Below are positions 9,294 to 62,705 of a DNA stretch of 64,000 bases, piece after piece (position 1 is the stretch's first letter; each line of letters starts with the position of its first letter). The stretch lies in sequence record MT612989.1. The stretch is one strand, 5' to 3'. The position numbers and the translations under genes were made by a program. The notes under the pieces are model-generated. The model saw only the letters and a program-made list of their open reading frames with translations, was not told the origin of the DNA and did not search any database.

Positions 9294-9545
9294 TTACGGT
9301 AAACGTAAGTCTTTTGCAGTGATGTAGATGTCTGTGTCAGGGTCGTAGTACATACCCTCACGTGCATCGTAGTAATAAACTTTACCATTCAGGTCAGTAT
9401 ATGGACCCTCTAGACCTGAATTAGACAAGTCTGGGTAACGGCTATCATCTACTTTACGATGTTTGACAACACGCTCGTGAAACTCTTGTTCAGTTTCTTG
9501 CAGTTTGACTTCACCTTTTTTGAAAAAATCGTTAAAACCTTTCAT
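9294..9545 (-). CDS. Small late protein with capsid-targeting-like leader
   Basis: Probable start MKGFNDFFKKGEVKLQE at 9545; TATAAATA 26 nt upstream. Confidence 0.75.
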   Translation of the reverse strand: MKGFNDFFKKGEVKLQETEQEFHERVVKHRKVDDSRYPDLSNSGLEGPYTDLNGKVYYYDAREGMYYDPDTDIYITAKDLRLP

Positions 9546-9570
9546 GTTAAACCTCTTTATTTGTTTAACG

Positions 9571-9578
9571 TATTTATA
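9571..9578 (-). promoter_or_regulatory. T4-type late (gp55) promoter
   Basis: Perfect TATAAATA on the minus strand. Confidence 0.8.
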
Positions 9579-9579
9579 A

Positions 9580-10593
9580 TCAATTGTAACTATATACTGA
9601 AGGGAAGTAGAATTCGTCAAGCCAGTCATCATACCACTCGTAGAAATCATTAACCAATTCAGGTGTGTGATTCGGAAGTGACGTTGTATCTTTTGCATTT
9701 TCTAGCACTTCAAGACGTTCTTGCAGCACTTCAGACACATATTCCCACTTGTACTTACCTTGTTTCACGTCACGATAGAACGCTGCGTTCTTCAAAGGGA
9801 ATTCCAACTTACCTACTGTTAGTATATCGATTGCTTGATCGATTACACGCATGGCATGTGATATCGCTTTCCAATCTGAACCACTTGCAGCACGCGCTTG
9901 ATATGCACGAGCACCATATTTGCTCATCATCTTCTCAAGACGACCCGCAGCTTCTTCAAACGTTATCTCAAGACCGAATACTTTCTCAAGCACACTGAAT
10001 GCAGGGTCTTTCAAATCGCTCGCGTCTTTAGTTTTAGGCCCATGATACCACTGAAAACGCACGTGAGCGTCTTCTGCACACAGTTCCCATAGTTGTTTGC
10101 ACAACTCAGGGCTTGAACCCAACTTCGCTTTAGAATCGACGTTGTGCGTCTCTACAGCACGGGCGAATTGCATAAGGCTGTTTAGTCGCGTACCTTTGAT
10201 GCCGTACTTCTGTGCTTGATTGAGCGCGTAACCAGTCATTGCTTTAACGTTTGATGTCAAATACGTACTTGTTAACTCACGACACATAGCAGAGAATGCA
10301 GGGTTGCAGTCATCTGGGTTCTGTAGTGCATTAAATGCCAATTCAATTGCATACGACTGACCTGCAAGAAAGTCACGCATGAACACTTGAACTGGTATAT
10401 ATTCAAAGTCTTCATCGTCTGCACCGTTCTTCTCAAACGATTTGCCAGTCGTGTGTACTGAGTTCTTTATTGCAACACCACGCAACAGTTTACGTATTTC
10501 AGGTTGAAAGACAGCTTTGTAGTCTGTATCTGACTCTGGCGTGTCTGTGCCATAGAGTTTCGAGCCGAATAGACTCGTGAATAGTACATTCAT
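9580..10593 (-). CDS. nrdC.11: Pol-beta-superfamily nucleotidyltransferase (T4 NrdC.11-like)
   Basis: LFGSKLYGTDTPESDTDY signature; WKAISHAMR; 337 aa. Confidence 0.8.
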   Translation of the reverse strand: MNVLFTSLFGSKLYGTDTPESDTDYKAVFQPEIRKLLRGVAIKNSVHTTGKSFEKNGADDEDFEYIPVQVFMRDFLAGQSYAIELAFNALQNPDDCNPAFSAMCRELTSTYLTSNVKAMTGYALNQAQKYGIKGTRLNSLMQFARAVETHNVDSKAKLGSSPELCKQLWELCAEDAHVRFQWYHGPKTKDASDLKDPAFSVLEKVFGLEITFEEAAGRLEKMMSKYGARAYQARAASGSDWKAISHAMRVIDQAIDILTVGKLEFPLKNAAFYRDVKQGKYKWEYVSEVLQERLEVLENAKDTTSLPNHTPELVNDFYEWYDDWLDEFYFPSVYSYN

Positions 10594-10865
10594 TGTACAC
10601 TCTCCCGCATAGCGATCATTGCGGTGTAGTTCATTACACTCACGTGATCATTATCTTCAAGTGCTTTATCGCGCAACTCATAGAGATAGTCGATAGAGCA
10701 CACATTAGGGTCGAACCAACCATGACGACCTTTCTTGCGTGCATCAGCAAGTTTTCTAGCCATTTCGTGACTAGAAGCAATGATCAATTGCTTATCAGCC
10801 CACTCTTCGTCTGGTTCAATTGATGGGTCAATAGCTAAATTCATGCTTATTTGAAAGAAGTTCAT
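10590..10865 (-). CDS. Conserved phage hypothetical protein
   Basis: KLADARKKGRHGW...CS motif, all-helical. Confidence 0.65.
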   Translation of the reverse strand: MNFFQISMNLAIDPSIEPDEEWADKQLIIASSHEMARKLADARKKGRHGWFDPNVCSIDYLYELRDKALEDNDHVSVMNYTAMIAMRESVQ

Positions 10866-10867
10866 AA

Positions 10868-11332: not shown

Positions 11333-11384
11333 AATATAAATCTCTTTTTGTTGGATTATTGAACGTTTAATCAGAATATGCCTT

Positions 11385-11413
11385 ATGATAAGCATTTTTT
11401 ACACTTTAGTCAA
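11385..11413 (-). promoter_or_regulatory. Early sigma70-type promoter
   Basis: TTGACT-N17-TATCAT. Confidence 0.8.
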
Positions 11414-11465
11414 CAATTATTTTGTCTTTTTTATGAGAAAATTGTAAATCAAGTAGTGTTGTAGC

Positions 11466-11473
11466 ACTAAATA
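11466..11473 (+). promoter_or_regulatory. Late-promoter-like motif
   Basis: ACTAAATA upstream of a plus-strand gene. Confidence 0.55.
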
Positions 11474-11597: not shown

Positions 11598-12158
11598 GTG
11601 ATGGAACTTAAAACATTTGATGAATATAAAGAAACAGAGCTTAAAGAAGCTACAATAAAGCAATGGGCTGGTCGTTCTGCATTAGCTGGTGCATCTCTCG
11701 GTGCTGCATTTGGCTTTATGACCGCAGCAGCGGGTGCGACAGCAACAGGTGGTTTGGCAGTCGCTGTACCACTTGCAACATGGGGTGCAATTAGTCTCGG
11801 TATTCATGGTCTTATTGGTGGTGCGTTATTTGCAGGCGGTCAAGCACGCAAAGACTACAGCGAACTCAAAAAGACTATGAAGAAAATCGAGAAGTATCGC
11901 TCACTGAAACAAGACGATATCACTGAGAAGAAAGTAGCAGCATTTGAAAAAGACTTAGAGCGTTCGCTGTTCTTAGTTCGTAAGCTTCGCACAAGTCTCA
12001 ACAGTGACATTGATATTGCAACAGCGAAAGGCGTATTTCGTAGCGACATCAAGCAATCTGATCAATATCTTCAAGGTCTTGAGAAGATGGAAGCAGAGCT
12101 GATAAAGATTGAAAAGGCTACTAAACGTGCTAAAAAAGCCGCTAAGAAGTCAAAATAA
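11598..12158 (+). CDS. Glycine-zipper hydrophobic-hairpin plus coiled-coil protein with capsid-targeting-like leader
   Basis: MELKTFDEYKETELKE; about 55-aa Gly/Ala-rich hydrophobic tract; basic coiled coil; AAAGGA RBS. Confidence 0.75.
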   Translation: MMELKTFDEYKETELKEATIKQWAGRSALAGASLGAAFGFMTAAAGATATGGLAVAVPLATWGAISLGIHGLIGGALFAGGQARKDYSELKKTMKKIEKYRSLKQDDITEKKVAAFEKDLERSLFLVRKLRTSLNSDIDIATAKGVFRSDIKQSDQYLQGLEKMEAELIKIEKATKRAKKAAKKSK

Positions 12159-12159
12159 C

Positions 12160-12190
12160 AAAAAAAGGGAGCTAATTGCTCCCTTTTTTT
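12160..12190. terminator. Bidirectional intrinsic terminator
   Basis: A7-GGGAGC-TAATT-GCTCCC-T7 between convergent genes. Confidence 0.88.
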
Positions 12191-12681
12191 TATCTGCGAC
12201 GTTTTTTAAACTTCGATTTTTTCACTTTTTTGACTGCTCGATTTAAAAAGCTTTCTTTTTTCTGTTTCTTCTTGACTACAGTCTTTGTTATCTTCTTCGC
12301 TTCTACCTTTTTAGGTTCAACACGTTTAATCACTGGCGCTTTCTTTACAGGCTGCTTGATTACAACTTGCTTAACGTGCGTCTTCTTCGACTCAAAAGAA
12401 TCACCTACTTCGTCGATTAACTCAGCAGCAACAAAACCAATCGCTGCATCACCTAAATCAAACCCGTCATCTTGCTGTACAACGACTGTCTGTGGTTGTT
12501 GCGGTTGTTCTTCAACAACAGGCGGCGTCACATCAAACTTTTCAGTAGTTGGTGCGTCAACTAGTAGCTGTTCATCTTCTTGTTCAGCATAGTAAGCGTT
12601 AGTATCAAGCGTCGCAGGTTTGTTGTCACATGCGGCAAGTGTCAGTGTTGCTAGTGCAACGAGTATAATTTTACGAATCAT
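12190..12681 (-). CDS. Lipoprotein with very basic C-terminal tail
   Basis: Lipobox LAA-C after the signal peptide; Lys/Arg-rich tail ending KKRRR. Confidence 0.75.
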   Translation of the reverse strand: MIRKIILVALATLTLAACDNKPATLDTNAYYAEQEDEQLLVDAPTTEKFDVTPPVVEEQPQQPQTVVVQQDDGFDLGDAAIGFVAAELIDEVGDSFESKKTHVKQVVIKQPVKKAPVIKRVEPKKVEAKKITKTVVKKKQKKESFLNRAVKKVKKSKFKKRRR

Positions 12682-13361
12682 AATAGCTCCGTGTGAAATA
12701 ATTCACTAGTTTCTTCAAAGAATTTAACAGCATCTTTTTCATTGATGAAAGTATGCCACTTCATTGATGTATGTTGCGTTTCGACTATTAGCTGATTTAT
12801 TGCTACGACATATCGACCGCTATCATCTTGACCAAGTGTAACAAATCTATCGGCTTTATCGTTGCTGTCAAAATACTGGTCAATTATTGTATCTATACCA
12901 TGTGCATCTTTATCAAATCGAACTTCTTGATCGATGCCTAAATGCGTCTCAAGACGGTCTAGTTTGTGCAATAATGCATCGTTCTGACTCTTCAACACGC
13001 GATTCTGAATGCTTTTATCAAACTTGGACACGACCCATGAGTTGATAATACCAATAGTCAAACCCAGTAACGATGTACCAACAACAAACATACACCCGAT
13101 GACATATCGACCACCTGTAGTGACAGGGTACTTGTCACCAAAACCGATTGTACTCATTGCCATCCATACTGTCCAGAAAGAATCACCCGGTGTTGTGATG
13201 TTCGCGTCAGGGTTTTGTATTTCGAATGAAAATAATATATTTGCCGCAGTAAGTGCTATTGATAGAGCGATTACTATCATCAAACCGAATATCATCAGCA
13301 TATTATACTGAGCAACTCCATGCTCATCGTATTTTCGAATATGTTTCTTAAATCGTTTCAT
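12678..13361 (-). CDS. 2-TM (KcsA-like) potassium channel
   Basis: TM1, pore helix SFWTVWMAMS, selectivity filter TIGFGD, KYPVTTGGR turn, TM2, cytosolic tail. Confidence 0.9.
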   Translation of the reverse strand: MKRFKKHIRKYDEHGVAQYNMLMIFGLMIVIALSIALTAANILFSFEIQNPDANITTPGDSFWTVWMAMSTIGFGDKYPVTTGGRYVIGCMFVVGTSLLGLTIGIINSWVVSKFDKSIQNRVLKSQNDALLHKLDRLETHLGIDQEVRFDKDAHGIDTIIDQYFDSNDKADRFVTLGQDDSGRYVVAINQLIVETQHTSMKWHTFINEKDAVKFFEETSELFHTELL

Positions 13362-23901: not shown

Positions 23902-24510
23902 TCACATAAAGAAATAGGGATTTTCAAGAGTCTTGAACTCGTTTACGACTGTCATCTTAAACGTCTTCAAGTCGATGTTAAACACTTTATTTGGCTCAAC
24001 ATGCTCTGGAGTTAAAATCGTTCGCGTGCTGCTAAACGATGTACCGTCTTCGCTCATGAACAACGGGCTAATTTCATTGCGAAATACACGCAAATTGCCG
24101 TTAATGAAGTGAAAACAAGCAAACGTACCGTCAAGTTCGTTTAATTTGCCGTAGCAAATCGCTTCAGCAATGTGTGCAGTATCCCATTCTTGAGTCTGAT
24201 TTTTCATGTAATGGTCTTTGAGAATACCATTATGCCACACGTGTGAATCATGCAACTGACCGTTCTCTTCAATTGTTACAATAGCGGGATGTGCTTGAGC
24301 ACTTGTTCCCGTTGGTGCTTGTACATGACAGATATAAAAATCTGCACTATCAGGCACATTAGTTGTATTGAACGCCCCTGTAAACTTGTGAACCGTCACA
24401 TGACCGTTCTTAAACGTACTCACAGAGTGAGTACGCGAACCACGATGAATATTACTCTTTGACAATTCAATAAGCTCTTGCTTGCTTCTAGCAGCAAATA
24501 GTCCACACAT
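23902..24510 (-). CDS. Class II (Ntn) glutamine amidotransferase associated with QueC
   Basis: N-terminal MCGLF nucleophile Cys, HRG, HVQAPT, WHNGIL, DT, DGTFAC, RNEISPL. Confidence 0.8.
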   Translation of the reverse strand: MCGLFAARSKQELIELSKSNIHRGSRTHSVSTFKNGHVTVHKFTGAFNTTNVPDSADFYICHVQAPTGTSAQAHPAIVTIEENGQLHDSHVWHNGILKDHYMKNQTQEWDTAHIAEAICYGKLNELDGTFACFHFINGNLRVFRNEISPLFMSEDGTSFSSTRTILTPEHVEPNKVFNIDLKTFKMTVVNEFKTLENPYFFM

Positions 24511-25226
24511 TAATGACCTGCCTTAGCAAATACTTGTTCCCATGGGATATCAATCGAGTAAGGTGCTGGGTCTTTAATACCCGCTTTACCGAAGTTCATG
24601 ATGCGTTCAGCACATGACGGACATTTACCACAGCTTTCACCTGCTTCGTTAGGGTCGTAACACGTTAGACTATCTTCAAACGGTACACCGAGCTTAACAC
24701 CAATAGCGATTTCATCTGCCTTTGACATACGAGCGAACGGAGCAAGTAATGCAATCTCGTGTTGACGATTCAGTGCAGATAGATTGTTCATGCCGTCAAG
24801 AAAGTCTTGTGTGCAGTCCCAGTAACCGTATGCGTCATGCACTTGAATGCCAGTAAAAACCGCTGCACAGCCATTTGCTTGCGCGAATGAGAACGCGATT
24901 GTGTTCAATAGCATATTACGATATGGAACTTCAGTTGGCGGTTGAGGGTCGCCTAGAACGTCTTGAATAGTTGGCATAGCAACATCTGAACCAGCGATAT
25001 TTGCACATACAGGTGCTACCACTTCACCTAAGAATGAGATGTCGATTAGACGATGCTCGATACCGAGCTTTTGACAAGTCAATTTAGCTTTTTCTAGCTC
25101 AATTGACTGTTTTTGACCGTAGTAGAACGATAATGCAAACACATTGTCTTTGCCGTATTCATCTACTAGTTTGTACGTAAGGATTGTTGAGTCCAAGCCA
25201 CCGCTTAGAACAGATACTACTTTCAT
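24510..25226 (-). CDS. queC: 7-cyano-7-deazaguanine synthase
   Basis: SGGLDS PP-loop, VPYRN, YWDC, TCY...CGKCPSC; start reassigned to MKVVSV. Confidence 0.95.
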   Translation of the reverse strand: MKVVSVLSGGLDSTILTYKLVDEYGKDNVFALSFYYGQKQSIELEKAKLTCQKLGIEHRLIDISFLGEVVAPVCANIAGSDVAMPTIQDVLGDPQPPTEVPYRNMLLNTIAFSFAQANGCAAVFTGIQVHDAYGYWDCTQDFLDGMNNLSALNRQHEIALLAPFARMSKADEIAIGVKLGVPFEDSLTCYDPNEAGESCGKCPSCAERIMNFGKAGIKDPAPYSIDIPWEQVFAKAGH

Positions 25227-25281
25227 TTTTAACCTCTCAAGTATATGAGTGCTCACAATTGAACACTCATCATAGCTCTTA

Positions 25282-26190
25282 TTACTGACGGAATAAACAA
25301 CTTCCGTTAGTGTGCGAGACAACTTCACTACCAAGTGCTTCTGGTAGTAGTTCTTCATGCGTTGCACGTGCTGGGCAGATATTCCAACCACCGCGACGTG
25401 TGTATAACGCTGTTACCATAAGCTCTTGTGGGTCGAACTTATCAAGTAACGCTTTGTAAATCATTTCAACACATTCTTCATGGAAATGATTCTCTTTACG
25501 GAATGACACGATGTATTGCATGAGACTGTCAATAGTTGGTGTTTTTTCACCTTTCATGTATACATACAGATCACCGAAATCTGGTTGATGCGTCACGCGA
25601 CAGTTAGAACGTAGATTCGGCGTGAACACTTTCATGCGCTTCACGTGAGATTCTTGCAGTAAATCAGCATCTGCACCGCTTTCTGAGTCGAATACAGTGT
25701 CTTCAGATACGTATTTGTCGAGTTCTGCATACCCTGTCATACCGTGCGGTTGTGTTGATCTGACTGTGAAGAAGCTCACTTGTACTTCAGCACCGATGAC
25801 TTCAGATAGATCACGCGACGCGATAGCTTCAATTGCACCTTGTACTTCAGCACGAGTCGCAGCGACTTTAGCCATGTTGAAGCTGTTCCAATACAGTTTC
25901 ATTGATTTACTTTCAACGATATTCGGTGAATCGCTTGGGTACACGACTTTCGCCATACCAGATACAGGCAGACCTTGTTCAGTCAGTGCCGATACTTCGA
26001 AGCCATGCCATGTATCAAACCCTGCAAAGTCTTCGTTTGTGATACCGTAATCAGTTCGATTTAGCTCACGCGGGATTGGTACAAGTAAATCTGGTCGAAC
26101 GTCTACGATATTAACGAAATCGCTGTAATCGCCAGCTTTTTTACCTAAATGCTCAGCCGCAATAGCTGATACTTCATCATAATTGCTCAT
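25282..26190 (-). CDS. queF: NADPH-dependent preQ0 reductase (bimodular QueF)
   Basis: IVESKSMKLYWNSF QueF motif, SNCRVTHQPD catalytic Cys, FHEECVE, YTRRGG. Confidence 0.92.
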   Translation of the reverse strand: MSNYDEVSAIAAEHLGKKAGDYSDFVNIVDVRPDLLVPIPRELNRTDYGITNEDFAGFDTWHGFEVSALTEQGLPVSGMAKVVYPSDSPNIVESKSMKLYWNSFNMAKVAATRAEVQGAIEAIASRDLSEVIGAEVQVSFFTVRSTQPHGMTGYAELDKYVSEDTVFDSESGADADLLQESHVKRMKVFTPNLRSNCRVTHQPDFGDLYVYMKGEKTPTIDSLMQYIVSFRKENHFHEECVEMIYKALLDKFDPQELMVTALYTRRGGWNICPARATHEELLPEALGSEVVSHTNGSCLFRQ

Positions 26191-26219
26191 GTATACCTCA
26201 TAAAGAGCGCCCGTAGGCG

Positions 26220-27599: not shown

Positions 27600-28268
27600 T
27601 TACCCTCGTGCTAGAGACATGAATTCGGCGCGTGCTTCTGGTTCGGTACGAAATGCACCTGATAGGTGACTTGTAACAGTGCTTGAGTTGTTGTCTTCAA
27701 CACCGCGTGCCTTGACGCAATAGTGTTTTGCGTCGATCAATACTGCCACGTCTTCAGTTTCAAGAATGAACTTCAGTGCTTCAGCGATTTGAACAGTCAA
27801 ACGCTCTTGAATCTGTGGGCGTCGAGCAAAGTACTCGACGATGCGATTCATCTTAGAAAGACCAAGTACTTTCTTATTTGGGATATATGCAACTGTTGCA
27901 AAGCCGTCGATTGTTACGATGTGATGCTCACATTGTGAAAGAACAGTAATGCCTTTTTCACAAACCATCTGATCGTAGTTCATTTTGTTGTCTACAGCAG
28001 TACATTTAGGGAACATATCTGGTGATAGACCGCTCATGAGTTCATTGACCATCATCTTAGCCCAACGCTTCGGTGTATCAACAAGCGAATCGTCAGTAAG
28101 GTCAAGACCTAGAGCTTGCATGATGTCAGTGAATCGATCTTCAAGAATTACTTTCTTTTCATCATCAGTTAGACCGTTTTCAACAGTCGGCGTGTGCATT
28201 CCGATTTCACGAAGATGCGCTTCAACTTTTTGTCCAAGAATTGGATCTACTTTATTTTTGTCTAACAT
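27600..28268 (-). CDS. folE: GTP cyclohydrolase I
   Basis: TPKRWAKM, SQCEHH, GLSKMNR, RPQIQERLT, HYCVKARGV. Confidence 0.96.
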   Translation of the reverse strand: MLDKNKVDPILGQKVEAHLREIGMHTPTVENGLTDDEKKVILEDRFTDIMQALGLDLTDDSLVDTPKRWAKMMVNELMSGLSPDMFPKCTAVDNKMNYDQMVCEKGITVLSQCEHHIVTIDGFATVAYIPNKKVLGLSKMNRIVEYFARRPQIQERLTVQIAEALKFILETEDVAVLIDAKHYCVKARGVEDNNSSTVTSHLSGAFRTEPEARAEFMSLARG

Positions 28269-28299
28269 TCTATTTCCTCTTAGTCAGAAAACAATAATA

Positions 28300-28317
28300 G
28301 CACGCCGAAGCGTGCTA
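28300..28317 (-). terminator. cUUCGg hairpin between queD and folE
   Basis: AGCACGC-TTCG-GCGTGCT. Confidence 0.55.
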
Positions 28318-28335
28318 CTAAACATTAATTGTTGA

Positions 28336-30785: not shown

Positions 30786-31661
30786 TTAAGCACCAATTCG
30801 TTCTAACGTTGCTTGACTCAATTTCGAATCACTTTGGGCTTCAAGAGAACTAACATCACTCCAAACGGTGATCTCATTTCCATTGATTACCCAGATCTTA
30901 CCAGAAATCATTGCTATACGTTGCTCATCATCGTAGAAAAGCTCGTCTTCAGGTTCATAATACCACTCTAACGGGTAAAATGATTTATACCAAGCAACAT
31001 CATCATTGATGCTACCTGCCGAAAGTTCAACAATACCAGCTTCGATGTTTAACGAGTGACCGCCACGAAGATACCAAATACCATCACCACCCGTTACTTT
31101 AACAATAGCAGCGTCGTTGATTGTAGGTAAATCGAGCAATTCAGTTCCCATTTCTGTATCATAACCAGTCGGGTTATCAGTGTAAACAGGCTTTGGGTCT
31201 TCAATAGGAACGATTCGTTCCATCACGAATGACGCACCTTCAGATTCATTTGATACTCTCAATTTGAAACCTAAATCTTTGGCAAATCGTTCAGCCATTC
31301 TTTTGTATAATCGAGTACGCTTACGGGAATCAGAACGATTTGTGTCATTAAATGCTGCGAATGTGATTCGATTTACGATGTTGTTTTGCATCACGTGCTT
31401 AATTTCAGAAATAACCGTGGCGAAAACAGTCATCGCGTCTTTAGAATCACCCTTTGCTAGGCTGTAATTGTAAGACATTGCACCCGCTGGCTTATGCATA
31501 AAATCCACGCCTAGAGCTTTGCGATCTTCTTCATAATACAGACCAATCATATACTCAGCGCCGTCTATTTCGAAGTAACTCTGATTACCACGTCGTGCTG
31601 TTATGGGTGCAGCGCGGTTAAACGCTTCTGTTAGCTCGTTTTGATATTCGCTAAATTTCAT
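30786..31661 (-). CDS. Putative internal (capsid-packaged) protein, paralogue A
   Basis: MKFSEYQNELTE leader; domain shared with 31663 and 40346. Confidence 0.75.
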   Translation of the reverse strand: MKFSEYQNELTEAFNRAAPITARRGNQSYFEIDGAEYMIGLYYEEDRKALGVDFMHKPAGAMSYNYSLAKGDSKDAMTVFATVISEIKHVMQNNIVNRITFAAFNDTNRSDSRKRTRLYKRMAERFAKDLGFKLRVSNESEGASFVMERIVPIEDPKPVYTDNPTGYDTEMGTELLDLPTINDAAIVKVTGGDGIWYLRGGHSLNIEAGIVELSAGSINDDVAWYKSFYPLEWYYEPEDELFYDDEQRIAMISGKIWVINGNEITVWSDVSSLEAQSDSKLSQATLERIGA

Positions 31662-31662
31662 T

Positions 31663-32583
31663 TTAAGATTCCATTATTTCTGGGTTTAACCACGGCGCAT
31701 CGAATGCATTCACGTATTTGGTAAACGCTGCATCGTCGGTGTATATTTTTAGACTTGTTTGACTAGTCAAGACGATATAGAAGTTCTTGAATGCACCAAC
31801 CAGATATGTTCTATCTTCTTCGGGACCCTCGCCATAGTCGAAAATTGGGTGCTGTAGTGCTGCTAACCAACCTTCCCTGTCCGACATTTCATACACAACG
31901 CGATTTACACGTAACCTAGCTGCAATTTCGTCAGCCGCTTTTACAACTGCACGACCTTGCCCTAGAACACCACTAATCATCGAACCATCTTCAACTTCAA
32001 ACGCTCTTACAAATGCATATGCATTGGCGTGAGATAAATTAACTTCAACATGGTCGCTATGTTCTTCAAACCCGACTGGACGACGTGCTCGACGTGAAAA
32101 GTCATCTACACGTTGTTGATAACCCACATCATACACAATGAATTCACGACCTACGTTTCTGTAATCATACTGAGGGAATTCTCTAAGTTTCGCCTTTGTC
32201 ATGATCTTATACAGTCTGAGACGTTTATCTGCATCACGCTGATCAGCGTCATTGAACGCGCTATATGTTATTTGAGCAGGTGAATTGTCTCTAACAAAAC
32301 TGAAAATAGCATCGACAACCGTTGATAATACGATACGAGCTGTTTTATCATCTTTCTTAGTTAGATTATAACCACTACCATCAAGAGCTTTGAACGACAC
32401 CTCAGCCTTCATAGACTTCATCCCGTTCGGTTCACGTATAATACCTTTCTGAATGTCTATTTCATAATAAACACCATCAACTTGAAACGCATACACGTTT
32501 AAATTTGGTAACTCTCGGACGAGTTTATATTTCGCAGGGCGATCTAACGACTCGTTGAGTCTTTGATATTCGCTAAATTTCAC
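31663..32583 (-). CDS. Putative internal (capsid-packaged) protein, paralogue B
   Basis: GTG start, MKFSEYQRLNE leader; SAFNDADQRDADKRLRLYK parallels AAFNDTNRSDSRKRTRLYK. Confidence 0.75.
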   Translation of the reverse strand: MKFSEYQRLNESLDRPAKYKLVRELPNLNVYAFQVDGVYYEIDIQKGIIREPNGMKSMKAEVSFKALDGSGYNLTKKDDKTARIVLSTVVDAIFSFVRDNSPAQITYSAFNDADQRDADKRLRLYKIMTKAKLREFPQYDYRNVGREFIVYDVGYQQRVDDFSRRARRPVGFEEHSDHVEVNLSHANAYAFVRAFEVEDGSMISGVLGQGRAVVKAADEIAARLRVNRVVYEMSDREGWLAALQHPIFDYGEGPEEDRTYLVGAFKNFYIVLTSQTSLKIYTDDAAFTKYVNAFDAPWLNPEIMES

Positions 32584-37194: not shown

Positions 37195-37223
37195 ATATTA
37201 ACCTAAATAAGTAATACAGTCAA
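37195..37223. promoter_or_regulatory. Divergent overlapping early (-) and late-like (+) promoters
   Basis: Minus TTGACT-N17-TAATAT; plus CCTAAATA at 37202-37209 in its spacer. Confidence 0.7.
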
Positions 37224-37241: not shown

Positions 37242-38297
37242 ATGATTATTTTTGAAAGCGTTCAATCGCAGCGTGCATTAGAGTACGCATCTAAGTTTAT
37301 CGTCGATAAGCTTGAAACACAATTAGAAGCTGCTCTGAGTAGCCCACCATTCGACCCGAACAAACTCGCACTTAATACCAAGAATCTGAACATCAAAACT
37401 GGTGAAACTGAGTTCGATGCGCTTCTTGCGCGTGGTATCGTTGCTTATCTTAAACTTGATAACCAAAACCCAACCGAAATGGGTGTTTGGCGCGGTGCTT
37501 TACACGACCCAGAAGCAGGTGAAGCAGGGAACTTGCAAATCACCGTTGATATAACCGGTGTCACTGCGGTGAGTCAGATTATGGCTAAGTTTAGAGTCGA
37601 GAAAGAACAGATGTACAGCACTACATTACATGAACTTCAACATGCTTATGATAACTGGCGTTCTGGTGATATAGAAGACTTCGAGACACGCGACGAAGAG
37701 GGTGTATATCAACACTCAGGGCGTAATAGAGCTTATATCGATAAAGAGTTCATTCGACATGCTAAAGCAGGTCACAAAGCGACACACGACGAATATCAGA
37801 ACTATTCGCACGAGATAAACGCTCGTTATGCACAAGCGATTGCAGATACTAAAGCAGATTTTAAAAATTCACCAGCCACTGCTCAAGCATGGATTAATCG
37901 ATTTAAACACAACTTTGATGGGTGGGACAATATACCAGAAGAGTCTAAGAAACGATTGATTTCGCGTGCAGGGGCTGAACACAGTGAGTCGAGACAACCG
38001 TTTAAAGGTAAAGAAAGCAGCTTGATGTATGCATTGAAAGGGTTTGATGTGAGATACACCAGAGATAAGAAGTTTAGTAAGATTGGTTATTGGTTCAGTC
38101 AGTTTAAATACGACGGTCGTAATTCTAGCGAATTGCTAGATAAACTTGAATTACTAGCACATAAAACTGAAGGTGTAGTTGCACTACCACTTGATGATAT
38201 ACGAGCAAACTCAGCATTATTCGCTGAAATGCGTAATCGTATGAATCTAGGTTCATGGGAACGAATGGGTTCTAATCATATGATCTACCGACCATAA
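37242..38297 (+). CDS. Zincin-like metallopeptidase-domain protein, probably late
   Basis: LHELQHAYD (HExxH) plus downstream HEINAR; late-like promoter. Confidence 0.75.
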   Translation: MIIFESVQSQRALEYASKFIVDKLETQLEAALSSPPFDPNKLALNTKNLNIKTGETEFDALLARGIVAYLKLDNQNPTEMGVWRGALHDPEAGEAGNLQITVDITGVTAVSQIMAKFRVEKEQMYSTTLHELQHAYDNWRSGDIEDFETRDEEGVYQHSGRNRAYIDKEFIRHAKAGHKATHDEYQNYSHEINARYAQAIADTKADFKNSPATAQAWINRFKHNFDGWDNIPEESKKRLISRAGAEHSESRQPFKGKESSLMYALKGFDVRYTRDKKFSKIGYWFSQFKYDGRNSSELLDKLELLAHKTEGVVALPLDDIRANSALFAEMRNRMNLGSWERMGSNHMIYRP

Positions 38298-38322
38298 AAA
38301 GGGGCTTTCGCCCCTTTTTTTA
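38296..38322. terminator. Bidirectional intrinsic terminator
   Basis: A5-GGGGC-TTTC-GCCCC-T8. Confidence 0.88.
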
Positions 38323-40345: not shown

Positions 40346-41797
40346 TTATTCTTCGTCTTCGTCGTCTTTGTACTCAGATACATCAACGCCGTTTTCTTCA
40401 GCAAGCTCAATAAGTGCTTCATCAAATGACGGACCGAAGTTACCATTTATAGCGTATTCAAACACCTCTTCTTGATATGGATCTGAGTTATTCATCAAGA
40501 ACTCAGCAGCTTCGCGACCATCTAACCCCAGTACGTTAAATACCGCACCAATTGCAGATTCGCGCACGTCTTCATCATGATCTGCTAGAAGTTCCTCAAC
40601 TCGATAACCTTGTTCGGCTACGTATTGGCGTTCTTCGTAATCATCTGTATCATCGATCATTCTATCCCAGATATCTTCTGCCATATCGCGACCGAATTCA
40701 CTTTCGTAGCGTTTCGCATATGTGATACGTGTGTCTGCATCGTCGTTTGAGAATGACCAATCCCACGCTGTGTCCCGTACATCTTCATCTGAGTCAAGAA
40801 CAAGATCCCAAATACCAAAACCCATGTCCGCAGCTTGTTTACGGTGTTGCCAATCGCCAGATGAAGCAAGTTTATCGCCCATTTCGTAATCTGACTCAAC
40901 TACCGCTGCACGAACGTCTTCGTCATCGTGGAAAATCAGCTCTTCGTGCATCAGACCCCAACTAGCAATACGAACTAGAGTTTGCCAATCTGCGTGTTCA
41001 ATGATTTCATCTTCACGACCTTCATTGATCCATGCTTCGATTTGATATTGATCTGCTTCATCAACAAAATCTTCAAGAGACGGGCCGCCACCAAATGCAG
41101 TGTCGTAGCTGCTAGAACGCTCGTTCTCGTTGGTAAGAGTAAATGAAACTGAACCACTCATACTCATCAACGCTTGGTTAACGTCGCTGTCGCTCATTGA
41201 AAGAATGCTGCGCGTCACGTTCTTACGAACAGAACGGAAATCGTTTGCGCCACCTGCTAGACGTGCAAGCCAGCGGTCGCTAATGTCAGTCGAATAACCA
41301 TATTCTTTACCGAAAGTCAGTGACAGTGCGTAGTAAAGCATTGGACGAGAAATCAAGTCTTTCAATAGCTTTTTCTTGCTTTCTTCATCTAAACGAGTCG
41401 CTTCGCGTCGATTGTTAACAAGTGCGTAGTACTCGTGATTCTTTGGTAGTTCATAAGCTGCGCTGAAGTCATATTCATACGGCTTCATGCCCATTTCTTC
41501 TTCATACGTCTCGGTGAATTCACGTAGAGTCGTCAATACACCAGAGAATACCGCAGCCGCAGAGTGTCCTGCTTTACCTGTCTGAGCATAACCACCTGAG
41601 TTTTGGAATGTAATAGTGAAATAACCAGGGTTGCTTTCTTCAACACCAACTTCAAATCGCTCACCAGCAGCGTCGAATCGCGCTGAAGTCTCGCCCGTCC
41701 CGTTCTCATGACCCCAATCCCAATCAATGTCGATATTCGCACGATCAGAAATCTCATCAAGGCGAACTTCTTGATAAAATTCGTTAAATTGTTTCAT
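40346..41797 (-). CDS. Putative internal protein, paralogue C, with acidic HEAT/LRV-like repeats
   Basis: MKQFNEFYQEVRLDE leader; shared N-terminal domain; repeats L-x-x-D/H-x-D-E-D-V-R. Confidence 0.78.
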   Translation of the reverse strand: MKQFNEFYQEVRLDEISDRANIDIDWDWGHENGTGETSARFDAAGERFEVGVEESNPGYFTITFQNSGGYAQTGKAGHSAAAVFSGVLTTLREFTETYEEEMGMKPYEYDFSAAYELPKNHEYYALVNNRREATRLDEESKKKLLKDLISRPMLYYALSLTFGKEYGYSTDISDRWLARLAGGANDFRSVRKNVTRSILSMSDSDVNQALMSMSGSVSFTLTNENERSSSYDTAFGGGPSLEDFVDEADQYQIEAWINEGREDEIIEHADWQTLVRIASWGLMHEELIFHDDEDVRAAVVESDYEMGDKLASSGDWQHRKQAADMGFGIWDLVLDSDEDVRDTAWDWSFSNDDADTRITYAKRYESEFGRDMAEDIWDRMIDDTDDYEERQYVAEQGYRVEELLADHDEDVRESAIGAVFNVLGLDGREAAEFLMNNSDPYQEEVFEYAINGNFGPSFDEALIELAEENGVDVSEYKDDEDEE

Positions 41798-41825: not shown

Positions 41826-41833
41826 TATTTAGA
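41826..41833 (-). promoter_or_regulatory. Late-promoter-like motif
   Basis: TCTAAATA 29 nt upstream of the 41797 start, just downstream of a terminator. Confidence 0.6.
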
Positions 41834-41840
41834 CAAAACA

Positions 41841-41867
41841 AAAAATCCCGTCTTAACCGACGGGATT
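41841..41867 (-). terminator. Intrinsic terminator
   Basis: AATCCCGTC/GACGGGATT stem followed by a T-run on the minus strand. Confidence 0.8.
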
Positions 41868-41870
41868 TAA

Positions 41871-51140: not shown

Positions 51141-51578
51141 CTACTTAACGTATCCCCACTCAAGGAAATATCCCTCGGTGAAGAGTTGTTTAGCAAGTAC
51201 AACTTGACTGATCACATGATAACGCTCATCGTCGTTTGAAATTTCACTTGAATAGTCGCGAGACTCTTGATGCGATTTTGCATAATTCTCGACAATCGTA
51301 ACCCAATCGCCTGAGTTGATTACGCTGACGTGCTCGGGACATGCGCGATAGATTTTAACTTTCGCATTCGGGTTTCCGTGACAGCGTTTGATGATTTGAT
51401 ACGCCTCGCGCTCATCGCGATCATTGTGATTGCCGTACCATCGTAGACCGTTCGCTTCGTATACATCTTCAGGGAATGTTCCCGTCAATGAGATATCGTA
51501 CAGCGGGCTGTCATCAGGAGGTGACGGCGCTCGGTGTTGCATGTGATATTCGCTCAAAAATTCAGTGTAAGTTTTCAT
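51141..51578 (-). CDS. Putative internal protein, ART-like fold
   Basis: MKTYTEFLSE leader; IYRA...GDWVT...YA..H...EWGY. Confidence 0.7.
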   Translation of the reverse strand: MKTYTEFLSEYHMQHRAPSPPDDSPLYDISLTGTFPEDVYEANGLRWYGNHNDRDEREAYQIIKRCHGNPNAKVKIYRACPEHVSVINSGDWVTIVENYAKSHQESRDYSSEISNDDERYHVISQVVLAKQLFTEGYFLEWGYVK

Positions 51579-51976: not shown

Positions 51977-51992
51977 AATAAAAATATATTTA

Positions 51993-60243: not shown

Positions 60244-60510
60244 TTAAACTATTCGTTTTGCTCGTTTTGCTCGTTCTGTAAGTGCATCTGAGAATTCCGC
60301 TTCTAATGTTTCTAATGTATCGTCTAATGTTACAGTAACAACACACATAGAGTCAAGAAGAATAAATGTCACTTTTTCTTCGTCTGTCTTGATTGTTAAA
60401 TCTTCGTCAGGCATAATCATGAATTCTCGCGACCAGAATGCGAAAGACGTAGCAGGGCAGTCTAGCATATCACGTACAGTAGTAAGGCGAATTGATTCAG
60501 TAATCATCAT
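60244..60510 (-). CDS. Hypothetical protein
   Basis: First gene after promoter. Confidence 0.7.
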   Translation of the reverse strand: MMITESIRLTTVRDMLDCPATSFAFWSREFMIMPDEDLTIKTDEEKVTFILLDSMCVVTVTLDDTLETLEAEFSDALTERAKRAKRIV

Positions 60511-60547
60511 AATGTACTCTCTTTGTTTTCGTATCTCGTTTCGATAG

Positions 60548-60587
60548 AGCTATAATACGCAAAAAGGGTTGCCGAAGCAACCCTTTT
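60548..60587 (-). promoter_or_regulatory. Composite terminator/promoter cassette
   Basis: 40-bp exact copy of 45425-45464. Confidence 0.88.
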
Positions 60588-60604
60588 ATTCAAATAATTT
60601 CAAA

Positions 60605-61252
60605 TTATTTTGTCCAAACTACCGAAGCACCTGAACCAGATTTCTTGTAACCGTACTTTGAAAGGTCTGGAATACGTTGAAAGCTGTCTTTCGCTGTAAC
60701 TACACCGCGAGTAGCAATTTCTTTAGCCACGTCTCTTGTTGCATTACCTGCTTCAATCTGCATAGACAGATCTGGATATTCTTGAGCAATGAATTGCATC
60801 ATGATATCGTTTTTGCTTTTACCACTGATCACGTTCAACACAGTTTGAGTAATGTCAGTACCGCGAGTGATATGGAAAACTTTACCACGAGCACGAGACT
60901 CAACATCACGAATAATCTCTGCTTCGACTTCTTCAGGTACAACGTTCAGTACGTAAGAAGTAAACGCCGTATCGAATGATTCCCCATTTGGGATAGTCAG
61001 ACTGACATCAGTCCAACCATCAGCAGATGTACCATTGAATTTGTCATATGCATACGTTTTGATGCCTTCAGAGCGTAAAAATTCAGCGTTACGACCGTAT
61101 TTACCAGCACCATAGTCAAGAGCAGTACCACCCGGTGTAAACATACCTTTCTTGTATAGTTTAACCAGTGCTGCTACTTCTTTACCACGTATCGACGTTG
61201 CTGCGGAACTGTACTTTTGTACTTCAGTTAAAAATTCACCAAATTTCTTCAT
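60605..61252 (-). CDS. SAM-dependent (amino-)methyltransferase with capsid-targeting-like leader
   Basis: Start MKKFGEFLTE at 61252; ALDYGAGKYG motif I, AYDKF, TSYVLNVV motif IV-like. Confidence 0.75.
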   Translation of the reverse strand: MKKFGEFLTEVQKYSSAATSIRGKEVAALVKLYKKGMFTPGGTALDYGAGKYGRNAEFLRSEGIKTYAYDKFNGTSADGWTDVSLTIPNGESFDTAFTSYVLNVVPEEVEAEIIRDVESRARGKVFHITRGTDITQTVLNVISGKSKNDIMMQFIAQEYPDLSMQIEAGNATRDVAKEIATRGVVTAKDSFQRIPDLSKYGYKKSGSGASVVWTK

Positions 61253-61259
61253 TGTGCAC

Positions 61260-62705
61260 CTACTTAATATCAATATCAATCAGATAGTTCGTTGCGTTAA
61301 CGCTGAACTCAATCAAAGTACCGTCAACCGAAACGTCAACGCCGTTTTCAACGATGTTTTCCATCATCGAGTAAAGTGTTTCTTGATCAAGCATCGCTTC
61401 AGAGAAAGATTGACCAACCTTGAATGAACTGAACTGATCATTTGCAAGAGCACGAATCAGTGAATCAACATCATCAACCATTTCAGTCACTGGACGTAGA
61501 CTAGACATGATATTCGGGTGGAATACACGATTCGACTCAGCCATTGTTGAAAATGCAGTCACTGTTTGACGCTCAGGGGTAACACAACCATCGAACGATA
61601 GCATAGCTTCAGCAAATGCTTTACAGTCAAAACGTTTCACGCCTTTACGTTCCATCATCGCAATCATATCAAGAAGCGGGTAACCTGCTTCAGATAATTC
61701 AACGCGATATTCTTCACACACACGACCTGCACGCATAGCATGTTCCGCGTTTGTTAGAACAATACTTGTGTTGTTGTGTTTCAGCTTCCAACCGTTGTCA
61801 AAATACGCTTCTTTCACATCAACAAGATTTTGCCATGCAGTCGATGTCAGTGGCGCAGTCGCGATTTCTTTCGTGAAAACGTTCTGAGCATGTTCAATCA
61901 TGGTGATGTTCTGTTTCAGATCGTATGCTTTGAATCCTTCTAGCATCGGCAAGCCAGTATCGTCTTTACGTTCACGAGCGTATGATACGTCTTTCGCTTC
62001 TTTTACAATGAACAAGTCCATGATTTTACGGTTCAGTGCAGCCAATGTAAGTGCATTTTTACCAGACTTGATTTTCATCTCAGTGATGTCAGACAGTTCG
62101 GCTTTTGAATCAACCGATTCAACAGTCACATAAACGTCACCAAGCTCGATGTTTTCAGCCATTGACAGTATTTCAGATGCTGAATTGTCATCAATTGATA
62201 GCGATTCAATTACAAGCTTATCAGAATCAGCAAGATTAATTTTCATTTCACGCATAGGGAAAACAACGTGAATGTCATTTTTCTTATAACCAAGCTTAGT
62301 CGCTTCGGCAACAACCTGATCTAAGTAACCGCCTTTAATCACGATGCTAGGAAGACGAGCTTCAGTACACATGATCATAGACTTAACTTGCTGTAGCTCA
62401 TGTGCTGGCAATGATAAGAATTCGTTTTCCATAAGCAAGTTGATTGTGCTTACGTTCTCGCTCAGATTAATATCGAAGTTTTTCTCATCGACGTTTTTAT
62501 CTTCAGCAAGTTTAGTACTCATGATAGATTTAAGCTCATTTGCCTTTTCCATCATGCCGATAGTTGTTTCAACGCCTTTGCCTTTGCTGAACTCAGTAGA
62601 TGCAGTGCCTAGCTCAACAATAACTTGACCAAACTTAGGGTAGATTTTACCACCCTGAGTTTGACGGCGATTTTCACTCAGAAATGAGTCAAAGTTACCT
62701 AACAT
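61260..62705 (-). CDS. Large hypothetical protein with capsid-targeting-like leader and possible degenerate P-loop region
   Basis: MLGNFDSFLSE; YPKFGQVIVELG; LGYKKNDIHVVF. Confidence 0.7.
   Translation of the reverse strand: MLGNFDSFLSENRRQTQGGKIYPKFGQVIVELGTASTEFSKGKGVETTIGMMEKANELKSIMSTKLAEDKNVDEKNFDINLSENVSTINLLMENEFLSLPAHELQQVKSMIMCTEARLPSIVIKGGYLDQVVAEATKLGYKKNDIHVVFPMREMKINLADSDKLVIESLSIDDNSASEILSMAENIELGDVYVTVESVDSKAELSDITEMKIKSGKNALTLAALNRKIMDLFIVKEAKDVSYARERKDDTGLPMLEGFKAYDLKQNITMIEHAQNVFTKEIATAPLTSTAWQNLVDVKEAYFDNGWKLKHNNTSIVLTNAEHAMRAGRVCEEYRVELSEAGYPLLDMIAMMERKGVKRFDCKAFAEAMLSFDGCVTPERQTVTAFSTMAESNRVFHPNIMSSLRPVTEMVDDVDSLIRALANDQFSSFKVGQSFSEAMLDQETLYSMMENIVENGVDVSVDGTLIEFSVNATNYLIDIDIK

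What the first reader, a model, noticed from the sequence alone, without database searches (positions are those of the whole stretch)
9294..62705. Dispersed cohort of proteins with T4 capsid-targeting leaders: a candidate injected-effector arsenal
Seen: eight unrelated or paralogous ORFs share an N-terminal M-x(1-3)-[F/Y]-x-[E/D/S]-[F/Y] leader ending in L-x-E. They are 9545 MKGFNDFFKKGEVKLQE, 11601 MELKTFDEYKETELKE, 31661 MKFSEYQNELTE, 32583 MKFSEYQRLNE, 41797 MKQFNEFYQEVRLDE, 51578 MKTYTEFLSE, 61252 MKKFGEFLTE and 62705 MLGNFDSFLSE; 37242 MIIFE is a weaker ninth. Several sit behind late-promoter motifs (TATAAATA 9571, ACTAAATA 11466, CCTAAATA 37202, TCTAAATA 41826, AATAAATA 51987) despite lying among early genes. 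Established: T4 IPII/IPIII begin MKTYQEFIAE, a leader sufficient for prohead packaging; gp21 cleaves after (I/L)-x-E; IPI* inhibits GmrSD and Alt is an injected ADP-ribosyltransferase. Inference: the cargoes (methyltransferase, ART-like, metallopeptidase, glycine zipper, acidic repeats) are the domain types found in phage 'polyvalent proteins', here split into separately addressed genes. They would form a first-strike anti-defence or host-takeover toolkit delivered with the DNA.
Basis: partly seen in the sequence, partly recalled or inferred. Interest (0 to 1): 0.82.

Follow-up and report, generated by a model that had tools for sequence, protein, structure and literature searches.

The report
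Capsid-targeting leaders on Vibrio phage proteins
Eight scattered genes of a KVP40-like Vibrio phage begin with the short T4-type tag that sends proteins into the phage head, and counterparts of most of them have been detected in virions of a related phage, so they are probably head-internal proteins delivered with the DNA: a known mechanism carrying new cargo.

Summary
The window is bases 1-64000 of Vibrio phage vB_ValM_R11Z, a KVP40-like Schizotequatrovirus. Eight genes share a leader with an aromatic-x-acidic-aromatic core that ends in L-x-E. Two of them (51578, 61252) keep the exact 10-residue register of the T4 ipII/ipIII leader. The pattern is far above chance: 8 observed against 0.4 expected, and 0 of 2000 shuffles reach 8. 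The proteins are otherwise unrelated, apart from one paralogue pair. A published virion proteome of the related phage 6E35.1a contains orthologues of six of the seven gene families that have one, at abundances typical of minor structural proteins. The 62705 family was not detected, and 51578 has no orthologue there. The genome encodes the gp21 protease and scaffold core. Four genes have conserved late-type promoter motifs. The cargo is only partly as claimed. 61252 is a SAM methyltransferase. 62705 is a zeta/AAA_33-like domain with a degenerate P-loop. 31661 and 32583 share a module found in Alt and in large multidomain phage proteins. 37242 has a conserved HExxH. No in-window gene is ART-like. 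Cleavage, injection and anti-defence roles remain inferred. Verdict: new members of a known kind.

The parts
9294..9545 (-). CDS _21, 83 aa, acidic, Tyr-rich C-terminus. Leader is 17 aa (9495-9545), MKGFNDFFKKGEVKLQE.
   Evidence: The orthologue 6E35.1a p0024 (VP_0192) is in the virion proteome at 6/13 counts. K-I/L-Q-E is conserved.
9571..9578 (-). TATAAATA late-promoter consensus, 26 nt upstream of _21
   Evidence: It is one of only two exact copies on the - strand of the window. It is conserved upstream of the 6E35.1a orthologue.
11466..11473 (+). ACTAAATA late-type motif, 135 nt upstream of _25
   Evidence: It is conserved at -111 in 6E35.1a, in an otherwise diverged intergenic region.
11601..12158 (+). 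CDS _25, 185 aa, basic (pI 10). It has a Gly/Ala-rich hydrophobic segment, a coiled-coil-like region and a Lys-rich tail. Leader is 16 aa (11601-11648).
   Evidence: The orthologue p0027 (VP_0188) is in the virion proteome at 7/21 counts. It lies on the opposite strand to its neighbours.
12159..12195 (+). Intrinsic-terminator-like hairpin plus T-run directly after _25
   Evidence: Read directly from the sequence.
30786..31661 (-). CDS _58, 291 aa. Leader is 12 aa (31626-31661), MKFSEYQNELTE. The N-terminal domain of about 150 aa is shared with Alt-type and multidomain phage proteins.
   Evidence: The orthologue p0057 (VP_0154) is in the virion proteome at 37/51 counts.
31663..32583 (-). CDS _59, 306 aa, GTG start, paralogue of _58 (24% identity overall). 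Leader is 11 aa (32551-32583).
   Evidence: In alignment A2, M1 K2 F3 S4 E5 Y6 Q7 L10 E12 are invariant across orthologues and this paralogue.
37202..37209 (+). CCTAAATA late-type motif, 32 nt upstream of _70
   Evidence: It is conserved in 6E35.1a and KVP40.
37242..38297 (+). CDS _70, 351 aa. It has no CTS-type leader (MIIFES...). A HELQH motif at residue 130 is conserved. It lies on the opposite strand to its neighbours.
   Evidence: The orthologue p0071 (VP_0140) is in the virion proteome at 18/25 counts.
38296..38319 (+). Strong terminator-like hairpin after _70
40346..41797 (-). CDS _75, 483 aa, very acidic (mature pI 4.2), helical-repeat-like. Leader is 15 aa (41753-41797), MKQFNEFYQEVRLDE.
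   Evidence: The orthologue p0077 (VP_0134) is in the virion proteome at 58/109 counts.
41826..41833 (-). TCTAAATA late-type motif, 28 nt upstream of _75
   Evidence: In 6E35.1a, 11 of 16 copies of this octamer sit 16-40 nt upstream of gene starts, seven of them upstream of structural or virion-detected genes.
41843..41868 (-). Terminator-like hairpin (10-bp stem) immediately upstream of the TCTAAATA motif
   Evidence: It is conserved in KVP40.
51141..51578 (-). CDS _92, 145 aa, an accessory gene. Leader is 10 aa (51549-51578), MKTYTEFLSE, in the exact register of the T4 ipII/ipIII leader.
   Evidence: It is absent from KVP40 and 6E35.1a. Actinophage homologues align only from residue 8-10 onward.
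60605..61252 (-). CDS _107, 215 aa, class-I SAM-dependent methyltransferase fold. Leader is 10 aa (61223-61252), MKKFGEFLTE.
   Evidence: The orthologue p0106 (VP_0103) is in the virion proteome at 31/79 counts.
61260..62705 (-). CDS _108, 481 aa. Leader is 11 aa (62673-62705), MLGNFDSFLSE. Residues of about 10-186 are weakly related to zeta-toxin/AAA_33 P-loop kinases, but the Walker A motif is degenerate.
   Evidence: The orthologue p0107 (VP_0102) is NOT in the virion proteome.

Best explanation
Most of these genes (at least _21, _25, _58, _59, _75 and _107; probably also _92; uncertain for _108) encode head-internal proteins. Each carries a short N-terminal propeptide that works like the T4 capsid-targeting sequence. 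Hydrophobic or aromatic residues, at positions 4 and 7 in the canonical register, would bind the scaffolding core while the prohead assembles. The phage's gp21-type prohead protease would then cut after the (L/I)-x-E that ends the leader and free the mature protein inside the head. The protein would leave with the DNA at the next infection.

The tag is modular. It sits on unrelated cargo: a SAM methyltransferase, an Alt-module protein pair, an acidic helical-repeat protein, a basic Gly-rich protein, and a domain that is tag-less in actinophages.

Shown: the leaders, their enrichment and conservation, the presence of the protease and core genes, and virion presence of orthologues in a related phage. 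Inferred: binding to the core, cleavage at L-x-E, late expression, ejection into the cell, and what the cargo does there (host takeover or counter-defence). _70 is probably also a virion protein, but it must be targeted some other way.
For: The leaders are real and enriched. _92 shares 7 of 10 identical and 2 conservative positions with the T4 ipII/ipIII leader fetched by tool, and _107 keeps the same register. This matches the published rule that residues 4 and 7 target and residues 8 and 10 are processed (PMC9026906).

The leader is the best-conserved segment of the _58 family, invariant across a paralogue that is only 24% identical overall. L/I-x-E is kept in every orthologue compared. Leaders are low-confidence N-terminal extensions in both AF2 models. 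Actinophage homologues of _92 align only after the leader.

R11Z encodes gp21, gp22, gp23, gp67/68 and Inh.

In the 6E35.1a virion proteome, orthologues of 6 of 7 families are detected. Their length-normalised counts are 0.06-0.25, against 0.002-0.05 for obvious non-structural carry-over and 0.1-0.4 for structural proteins. Genome-wide in 6E35.1a, 10 of 16 leader-regex hits are detected against a 21% base rate (Fisher P = 3e-4).

Other virion proteins of that phage start with similar L-x-E leaders: Alt, p0184, p0181, p0245, p0252 and p0276.

Late-type promoter motifs are conserved upstream of _21, _25, _70 and _75. A TATAAATA upstream of gene 24, with no terminator-like site before _107, could drive _108 and _107 late.
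Against: There is no proteome, N-terminal mapping or transcript data for R11Z itself. The only proteome is from a relative whose candidate orthologues are 45-91% identical. It used PEG-precipitated particles, which also contained clear non-structural proteins at up to about 20 counts, so the low-count detections (_21, _25) are weak.

The _108 orthologue, a large protein with a well-conserved leader, was not detected. _92 cannot be checked. _58/_59 and _92 have no late-type motif within 120 nt. Most cargoes are acidic and large, unlike the small basic T4 IPs. Leader lengths vary from 10 to 17 residues, and only two keep the canonical register. Nothing shows ejection or any effect on the host.
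Confidence: 0.7

Rival explanations
1. The leaders do target the proteins to the prohead core, but the proteins serve head assembly or DNA packing and are not injected effectors. They could be extra scaffold or core components, size determinants, or counter-ions and spacers for a 247-kb genome in a large prolate head. Some, such as _108, may be chopped up and expelled like gp22, gp67 and gp68.
For: The core proteins gp68, gp22 and gp21 of the relative also start with short leaders ending in (L/I)-x-E. _75 is highly acidic and abundant in virions. _108 has 9 internal (L/I)-x-E sites and is undetected in virions, as expected for a degraded core protein. KVP40-type heads are larger than T4 heads and their size determination is unexplained (PMC3012670).
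Against: A methyltransferase fold (_107), an Alt-type module (_58/_59) and a horizontally acquired accessory domain (_92) are hard to read as scaffold parts. _92 is present in only 8 Vibrio phage records in the collection searched and is absent from KVP40 and 6E35.1a, so it cannot be essential for assembly. The T4 precedent for CTS-bearing non-core proteins is injected proteins.
Confidence: 0.2
2. Only a subset is packaged. For the rest, the N-terminal likeness is a relic or coincidence and the proteins act in the cytoplasm of the producing cell. This applies above all to _108, perhaps also to _92, _21 and _25. The low-count proteome detections would then be lysate carry-over.
For: The _108 orthologue is absent from the proteome. 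Non-structural enzymes appear in the same proteome at up to about 20 counts, overlapping the raw counts of the _21 and _25 orthologues. The loose leader regex also hits clear non-virion proteins such as gp62. No late-type motif lies directly upstream of _92, _58 or _59.
Against: Length-normalised abundances of the _21 and _25 orthologues (0.11 and 0.075) exceed those of all obvious contaminants (0.05 or less). The leaders of _108 and _21 are conserved across three phages. _21 has a perfect conserved TATAAATA. _92 has the most canonical leader of all.
Confidence: 0.3
3. The shared N-termini are a by-product of composition or translation-initiation constraints (Lys-rich, AT-rich second codons, RegA-type sites) and have nothing to do with the capsid.
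For: M-K is a common start in this genome.
Against: Column shuffling preserves position-specific N-terminal composition, yet gives 0.41 expected against 8 observed, with 0 of 2000 shuffles reaching 8. The a-priori T4 rule gives P = 3e-5. There is a strong association with virion detection (Fisher P = 3e-4). The amino-acid pattern is conserved across diverged orthologues.
Confidence: 0.03

Closest known systems
[quoted passage not shown]
   Same: They have a short N-terminal leader with hydrophobic or aromatic residues at 4 and 7 and (L/I)-x-E at 8-10. The tag sits on otherwise unrelated proteins. The genes are scattered among non-structural genes, and a gp21-type protease and core are present in the genome. 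_92 and _107 match the register exactly. The R11Z gene _243 (outside the window) even sits in the tRNA cluster, as T4 ipI sits next to T4's tRNA genes.
   Different: Here the cargoes are mostly larger (8-55 kDa mature) and acidic, and at least one is an enzyme. T4 IPs are small and basic, and the three characterised ones inhibit GmrSD-type restriction enzymes. Leaders are 10-17 residues long with a variable register. No sequence similarity exists outside the leader. Processing and injection are unproven here.
T4 Alt (head-packaged, injected ADP-ribosyltransferase with a 7-residue propeptide)
   Same: It is an enzyme cargo with a short N-terminal propeptide cut by gp21. The Alt of the relative starts with a leader ending in L-N-E and is abundant in virions. 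The N-terminal domain of _58/_59 resembles part of Alt proteins of other T4-like phages in a fold search (E about 1e-5). A further paralogue lies next to alt.
   Different: The in-window proteins have no ART domain. The genome's own Alt, with its ART domain at residues 317-495, lies outside the window at 66181-67809. A profile comparison of the _58 family with R11Z Alt found nothing.
Polyvalent proteins of phages and conjugative elements (Iyer et al. 2017, PMC5512222)
   Same: The predicted logic is the same: proteins packaged in the particle and delivered with the DNA. Domain types overlap: methyltransferase, zeta-toxin-like kinase, ParB-associated domain, and a module also found in 800-1370-aa multidomain phage proteins.
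   Different: The defining feature, many effector domains in one polypeptide, is not met. These are separate genes with one or two domains each, and each has its own leader.
Ejection proteins of phiKZ/SPN3US-type giant phages and the Dar proteins of phage P1
   Same: They are large sets of head-internal proteins, many processed by a T4-related prohead protease and delivered into the cell. In P1 they serve anti-restriction.
   Different: Those are different phage lineages, with a different cleavage motif and no T4-type CTS. No homology was found here.

Membership tests
T4-type CTS-bearing internal head proteins | N-terminal leader of about 10 residues with targeting residues at positions 4 and 7 | tested here: met
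   The register is exact for _92 and _107. It is shifted or extended (aromatic-x-acidic-aromatic core) for _21, _25, _58, _59, _75 and _108. It is not met by _70.
T4-type CTS-bearing internal head proteins | Leader ends in the gp21 cleavage motif (L/I)-x-E | tested here: met
   It is present in eight of nine genes and conserved in every orthologue compared. It is absent from _70.
T4-type CTS-bearing internal head proteins | Genome encodes the gp21 prohead protease and the gp22/67/68 scaffolding core | tested here: met
   R11Z _197 to _200 at 120929-123113, plus the Inh homologue _192.
T4-type CTS-bearing internal head proteins | Protein present in mature virions | tested here: inconclusive
   There are no data for R11Z. 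In the published proteome of the relative 6E35.1a, orthologues of _21, _25, _58/_59, _70, _75 and _107 are detected. The _108 orthologue is not, and _92 has no orthologue.
T4-type CTS-bearing internal head proteins | Leader removed by proteolysis during head maturation | not testable with these tools
   The published tables give counts only, with no peptides.
T4-type CTS-bearing internal head proteins | Expression at the time of head assembly (late promoter) | tested here: inconclusive
   Conserved late-type motifs lie upstream of _21, _25, _70 and _75. Read-through from the gene 24 late promoter is possible for _108 and _107. No motif lies within 120 nt of _58, _59 or _92. No transcript data were found.
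T4-type CTS-bearing internal head proteins | Ejected into the host with the DNA | not testable with these tools
   This is an inference from T4.
Polyvalent proteins | Two to fifteen effector domains in one polypeptide | tested here: not met
   These are separate genes of 83-483 aa with one or two domains each.
Class-I SAM-dependent methyltransferases (for _107) | Rossmann-like MTase fold with a Gly-rich SAM motif | tested here: met
   The AF2 model has pLDDT 91. All top PDB matches are SAM methyltransferases (E about 1e-5, TM 0.4-0.56). D46, G48, A49 and G50 are invariant. Many homologues carry PF13489. The substrate is unknown.
Zeta-toxin/AAA_33 P-loop kinases (for _108) | Walker A GxxxxGK[ST] and kinase-domain homology | tested here: not met
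   Homology is weak (E 2e-5 to 6e-4 over residues of about 10-186) to proteins that carry Pfam Zeta_toxin/AAA_33. The Walker A position in _108 is degenerate, and Pfam does not hit _108 itself.
   None of the nine proteins has an ART hit in Pfam, PDB sequence search or fold search. ART or PARP-like hits occur only outside the window, in Alt _114 and weakly in _268.

The most novel reading that the evidence does not exclude
Schizotequatroviruses pack an unusually large, enzyme-rich internal proteome of a dozen or more proteins, each addressed by its own T4-type leader. This would be the unbundled equivalent of a polyvalent protein. The leader would be a portable address label that newly acquired domains can pick up. 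One example is _92, whose actinophage relatives lack it. Another is the leader-plus-methyltransferase combination, which recurs in many distant uncultured phages. The virion would then deliver a methyltransferase, a pseudo-kinase, Alt-module proteins and an acidic repeat protein as a first-strike kit.
Probability: 0.35. Interest if true: 0.65.

Novelty: new member of a known kind. Interest (0 to 1): 0.5.

Why it matters
Capsid targeting by a short leader is textbook T4 biology, and leader-based discovery of internal proteins is established for T-even phages. In the KVP40 group, however, these genes are all annotated 'hypothetical protein'. The one paper that found their orthologues in virions did not connect them to a targeting leader. 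Recognising the leader gives a shortlist of proteins that the phage probably delivers with its DNA, including a methyltransferase family that is widespread in uncultured marine phages. That makes a question directly testable: what do broad-host-range Vibrio phages inject to get past the first minutes of infection? It also shows the tag behaving as a modular label on horizontally acquired domains.

Tried and rejected
- Pfam, NCBIfam, PADLOC and PDB sequence searches of the nine proteins gave nothing above curated thresholds. PHROGs gave only 'unknown function' families, except a C-terminal match of _92 to a 'ParB C-terminal domain' family.
- The fold search of the _58 model against PDB gave no significant match. 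Scattered GNAT-like hits at E of 8e-3 or worse were not used.
- hhalign of the _58 family against the single R11Z Alt sequence found nothing.
- The AAA_33 protein near a distant methyltransferase homologue is not related to _108. A conserved MTase-kinase pair was therefore rejected.
- Miller et al. 2003 (KVP40 genome paper) is not held in the library. No KVP40-group transcriptome and no second virion proteome were found.
- The AATAAATA at 51987 was rejected as a promoter for _92, because it precedes regA.
- The 47-aa ORF at 135-278 that matches the core pattern has no ribosome-binding site and is not annotated. It was treated as chance.
The T4 leaders used for comparison were later read with the tools from NC_000866, and their letters are not reproduced in this report.

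Full report
IDENTITY. The window is 100% identical to bases 1-64000 of Vibrio phage vB_ValM_R11Z (MT612989.1). This is a Schizotequatrovirus (KVP40 group, Straboviridae) that infects Vibrio alginolyticus. The nine ORFs in the finding are the annotated CDS _21, _25, _58, _59, _70, _75, _92, _107 and _108. All are labelled 'hypothetical protein' in this record, and their counterparts where present are labelled the same in KVP40 and 6E35.1a.

OBSERVATION. Every N-terminus reads as quoted. Eight share an aromatic-x-acidic-aromatic core that starts at residue 3-6 and is followed within 0-9 residues by (L/I)-x-E. _70 (MIIFES...) does not fit. There are two minor corrections: _59 starts with GTG, and the _25 leader has four residues before the first aromatic.

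An all-against-all BLASTP shows that only _58 and _59 are paralogues. The similarity among the others is confined to the leader.

The pattern is not chance. Because that pattern was fitted to the data, I ran two fairer tests.
- I shuffled each N-terminal column among 419 predicted R11Z proteins, which keeps the peculiar composition of N-termini. Shuffles gave 0.41 +/- 0.64 matches to core plus L/I-x-E, against 8 observed. None of 2000 shuffles reached 8.
- I took a rule in advance from the T4 literature: aromatic at 4 and 7, L/I/V at 8, E at 10. It finds three R11Z genes (_92, _107, and _243 outside the window) against 0.06 expected, P = 3e-5.

The window holds 8 of the 13 genome-wide matches to the core pattern at predicted or annotated starts. 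At least two of the five outside it look like chance hits.

COMPARISON WITH T4, BY TOOL. The accession NC_000866 came from a paper. From it I read the ipI, ipII and ipIII genes. The ipII/ipIII leader is a 10-mer. _92 shares 7 identical and 2 conservative positions with it, and _107 keeps the same register. PMC9026906 reports three relevant facts. The first 10 residues of IPIII suffice for packaging. Residues 4 and 7 matter for targeting, and residues 8 and 10 for processing. Alt loses a 7-residue propeptide. PMC12373910 states that many ip genes of T-even phages were found through this signal and that Ip1-3 each inhibit a different GmrSD enzyme.

MACHINERY. R11Z encodes the gp21 protease, gp22, gp23, gp67/68-like core proteins and an Inh homologue at 115749-123113.

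VIRION EVIDENCE. PMC12028318 reports mass spectrometry of particles of phage 6E351A (GenBank MW824377). It detected 94 of 444 proteins (Table S4). Its Table S8 links those tags to PHROG numbers and GenBank tags. Matching by PHROG family and synteny gives the following replicate counts:
- _75 orthologue: 58/109
- _107 orthologue: 31/79
- _58/_59 orthologue: 37/51
- _70 orthologue: 18/25
- _25 orthologue: 7/21
- _21 orthologue: 6/13
- _108 orthologue: not listed
- _92: no orthologue in that phage or in KVP40

The preparation was PEG-precipitated and also contains clear non-structural proteins (ssb, dUTPase, thymidylate synthase, ligase, GTP cyclohydrolase) at up to about 20 counts. Per residue, however, the candidates score 0.06-0.25. 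Those contaminants score 0.002-0.05, and structural proteins score 0.1-0.4.

A loose leader regex run across the 6E35.1a genome gives 16 hits, against 4.9 expected from internal Met sites. Ten of the 16 are in the proteome, against a base rate of 21% (Fisher P = 3e-4). Further virion proteins of that phage also begin with short leaders ending in L-x-E. These are Alt, p0184, p0181, p0245 (82 aa, in the tRNA cluster), p0252 and p0276, and also the core proteins gp68, gp22 and gp21. The authors noted that some anti-defence proteins occur in particles, but they did not discuss targeting leaders.

CONSERVATION. In an alignment of _58, six orthologues and the paralogue _59 (24% identity overall), the invariant columns include M1 K2 F3 S4 E5 Y6 Q7 L10 E12. 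Across R11Z, KVP40 and 6E35.1a the (L/I)-x-E is always kept. The hydrophobic positions are kept or conservatively replaced, even where leader identity drops, as in _107. In both AF2 models the first 5-8 residues have pLDDT below 50 and precede the folded domain. Actinophage homologues of _92 align only from residue 8-10, so the tag looks added to an acquired domain.

EXPRESSION SIGNALS.
- Exact TATAAATA occurs only twice on the minus strand of the window, and one copy lies 26 nt upstream of _21.
- In 6E35.1a, TATAAATA and TCTAAATA are the two over-represented xxTAAATA octamers upstream of genes, and most copies lie upstream of structural or virion-detected genes. PMC1524935 notes that the first T is poorly conserved in T4-like phages and that Aeh1 uses CTAAATA.
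- TCTAAATA lies upstream of _75, directly after a terminator-like hairpin. CCTAAATA lies upstream of _70, and ACTAAATA upstream of _25. All three are conserved in relatives.
- _25 and _70 are the only candidates on the plus strand, and each is closed by a strong terminator. They look like autonomous late cassettes among oppositely oriented genes.
- A TATAAATA lies about 55 nt upstream of gene 24, and no terminator-like site lies on that strand down to _107. Late read-through into _108 and _107 is therefore possible.
- _58, _59 and _92 have no such motif within 120 nt. The AATAAATA at 51987 belongs to regA.
- No transcript data exist in the library.

CARGO.
- _107 belongs to a family of more than 230 clusters. 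Many carry PF13489. Its model (pLDDT 91) matches only SAM methyltransferases in the PDB. Many distant homologues from uncultured phages also start with a short M-[KR]-x-x-[DE]-hydrophobic-hydrophobic-x-E leader ahead of a conserved GGTSI block. One lies in the structural module of a myovirus contig.
- _108 has three full-length relatives. Its residues of about 10-186 weakly match proteins that carry Pfam Zeta_toxin/AAA_33, but its Walker A position is degenerate.
- The N-terminal domain of _58/_59 recurs in a paralogue next to alt and in a fourth virion protein. In the viral fold library it matches Alt proteins of other T4-like phages and several 800-1370-residue multidomain phage proteins. 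It matches nothing in the PDB.
- _75 is genus-restricted, acidic and helical-repeat-like.
- _25 is basic, with a Gly/Ala-rich hydrophobic stretch and a Lys-rich tail.
- _70 has a conserved HELQH.
- No in-window protein is ART-like.

INTERPRETATION. The best reading is that at least six of the nine are head-internal proteins addressed by a T4-type leader and trimmed by gp21, and that they are delivered with the DNA. The first part is well supported. Trimming, delivery and function are inferred from T4. The main rivals are (a) an assembly or core role instead of an effector role, most plausible for _75 and _108, and (b) a mixed picture in which some leader-like N-termini are not functional tags. 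A purely compositional origin is effectively excluded.

This is a known mechanism with new cargo families in a genus where it had not been pointed out. I rate it a new member of a known kind, of moderate interest.

Noticed in passing
window 24510-29268: A 7-deazaguanine DNA-modification cluster: queC, queF, a tgt/DpdA-like gene, folE and queD. PMC12028318 reports dPreQ1 in the DNA of the related phage 6E351A and found FolE in particles.
   Followed up: partly
window 51141-51578: _92 is an accessory gene found in only 8 Vibrio phage records. Its other relatives are about 170 Mycobacterium, Gordonia and Rhodococcus phage proteins (about 34% identity, some labelled 'ParB C-terminal domain'). Their alignments begin right after the 10-residue leader.
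   Followed up: yes
window 41826-41868: A terminator-like hairpin is immediately followed by a late-type TCTAAATA motif upstream of _75, and the arrangement is conserved in KVP40. It is a compact terminator-promoter junction that isolates this gene as its own unit.
   Followed up: partly
L012:3693-3935 (R11Z 167693-167935, outside the window): An 80-aa gene inside the tRNA cluster has a canonical 10-residue leader. Its 6E35.1a orthologue is in the virion proteome. T4 ipI likewise sits beside T4's tRNA genes.
   Followed up: partly
L008:3553-4437 (KVP40.0116): The annotated start of the KVP40 orthologue of _58 lies 11 codons upstream of the conserved leader Met. It is probably a mis-called start.
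   Followed up: no
L014:6001-6654: A distant homologue (about 40% identity) of the _107 methyltransferase has its own short leader ending in I-F-E. It lies between tail-sheath and terminase genes on a 41.5-kb metagenomic myovirus contig. The leader-plus-methyltransferase combination extends well beyond Vibrio phages.
   Followed up: partly
L012:27170-28258 (R11Z 191170-192258, outside the window): A 362-aa protein has a 16-residue leader ending in L-N-E and a weak PARP-catalytic-domain hit (E 1e-4, below cut-off). Its 6E35.1a orthologue is in the virion proteome. It is a better 'ART-like cargo' candidate than anything in the window.
   Followed up: partly
window 2339-4651, 12678-13361 and 42847-43359: NAD-salvage genes (NMNAT, NadM-Nudix), a protein annotated as a potassium channel, and a macro-domain protein lie among the early genes.
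   Followed up: no
window 135-278: An unannotated 47-aa ORF matches the aromatic core pattern. It has no ribosome-binding site and no L-x-E, so it was treated as a chance hit.
   Followed up: yes
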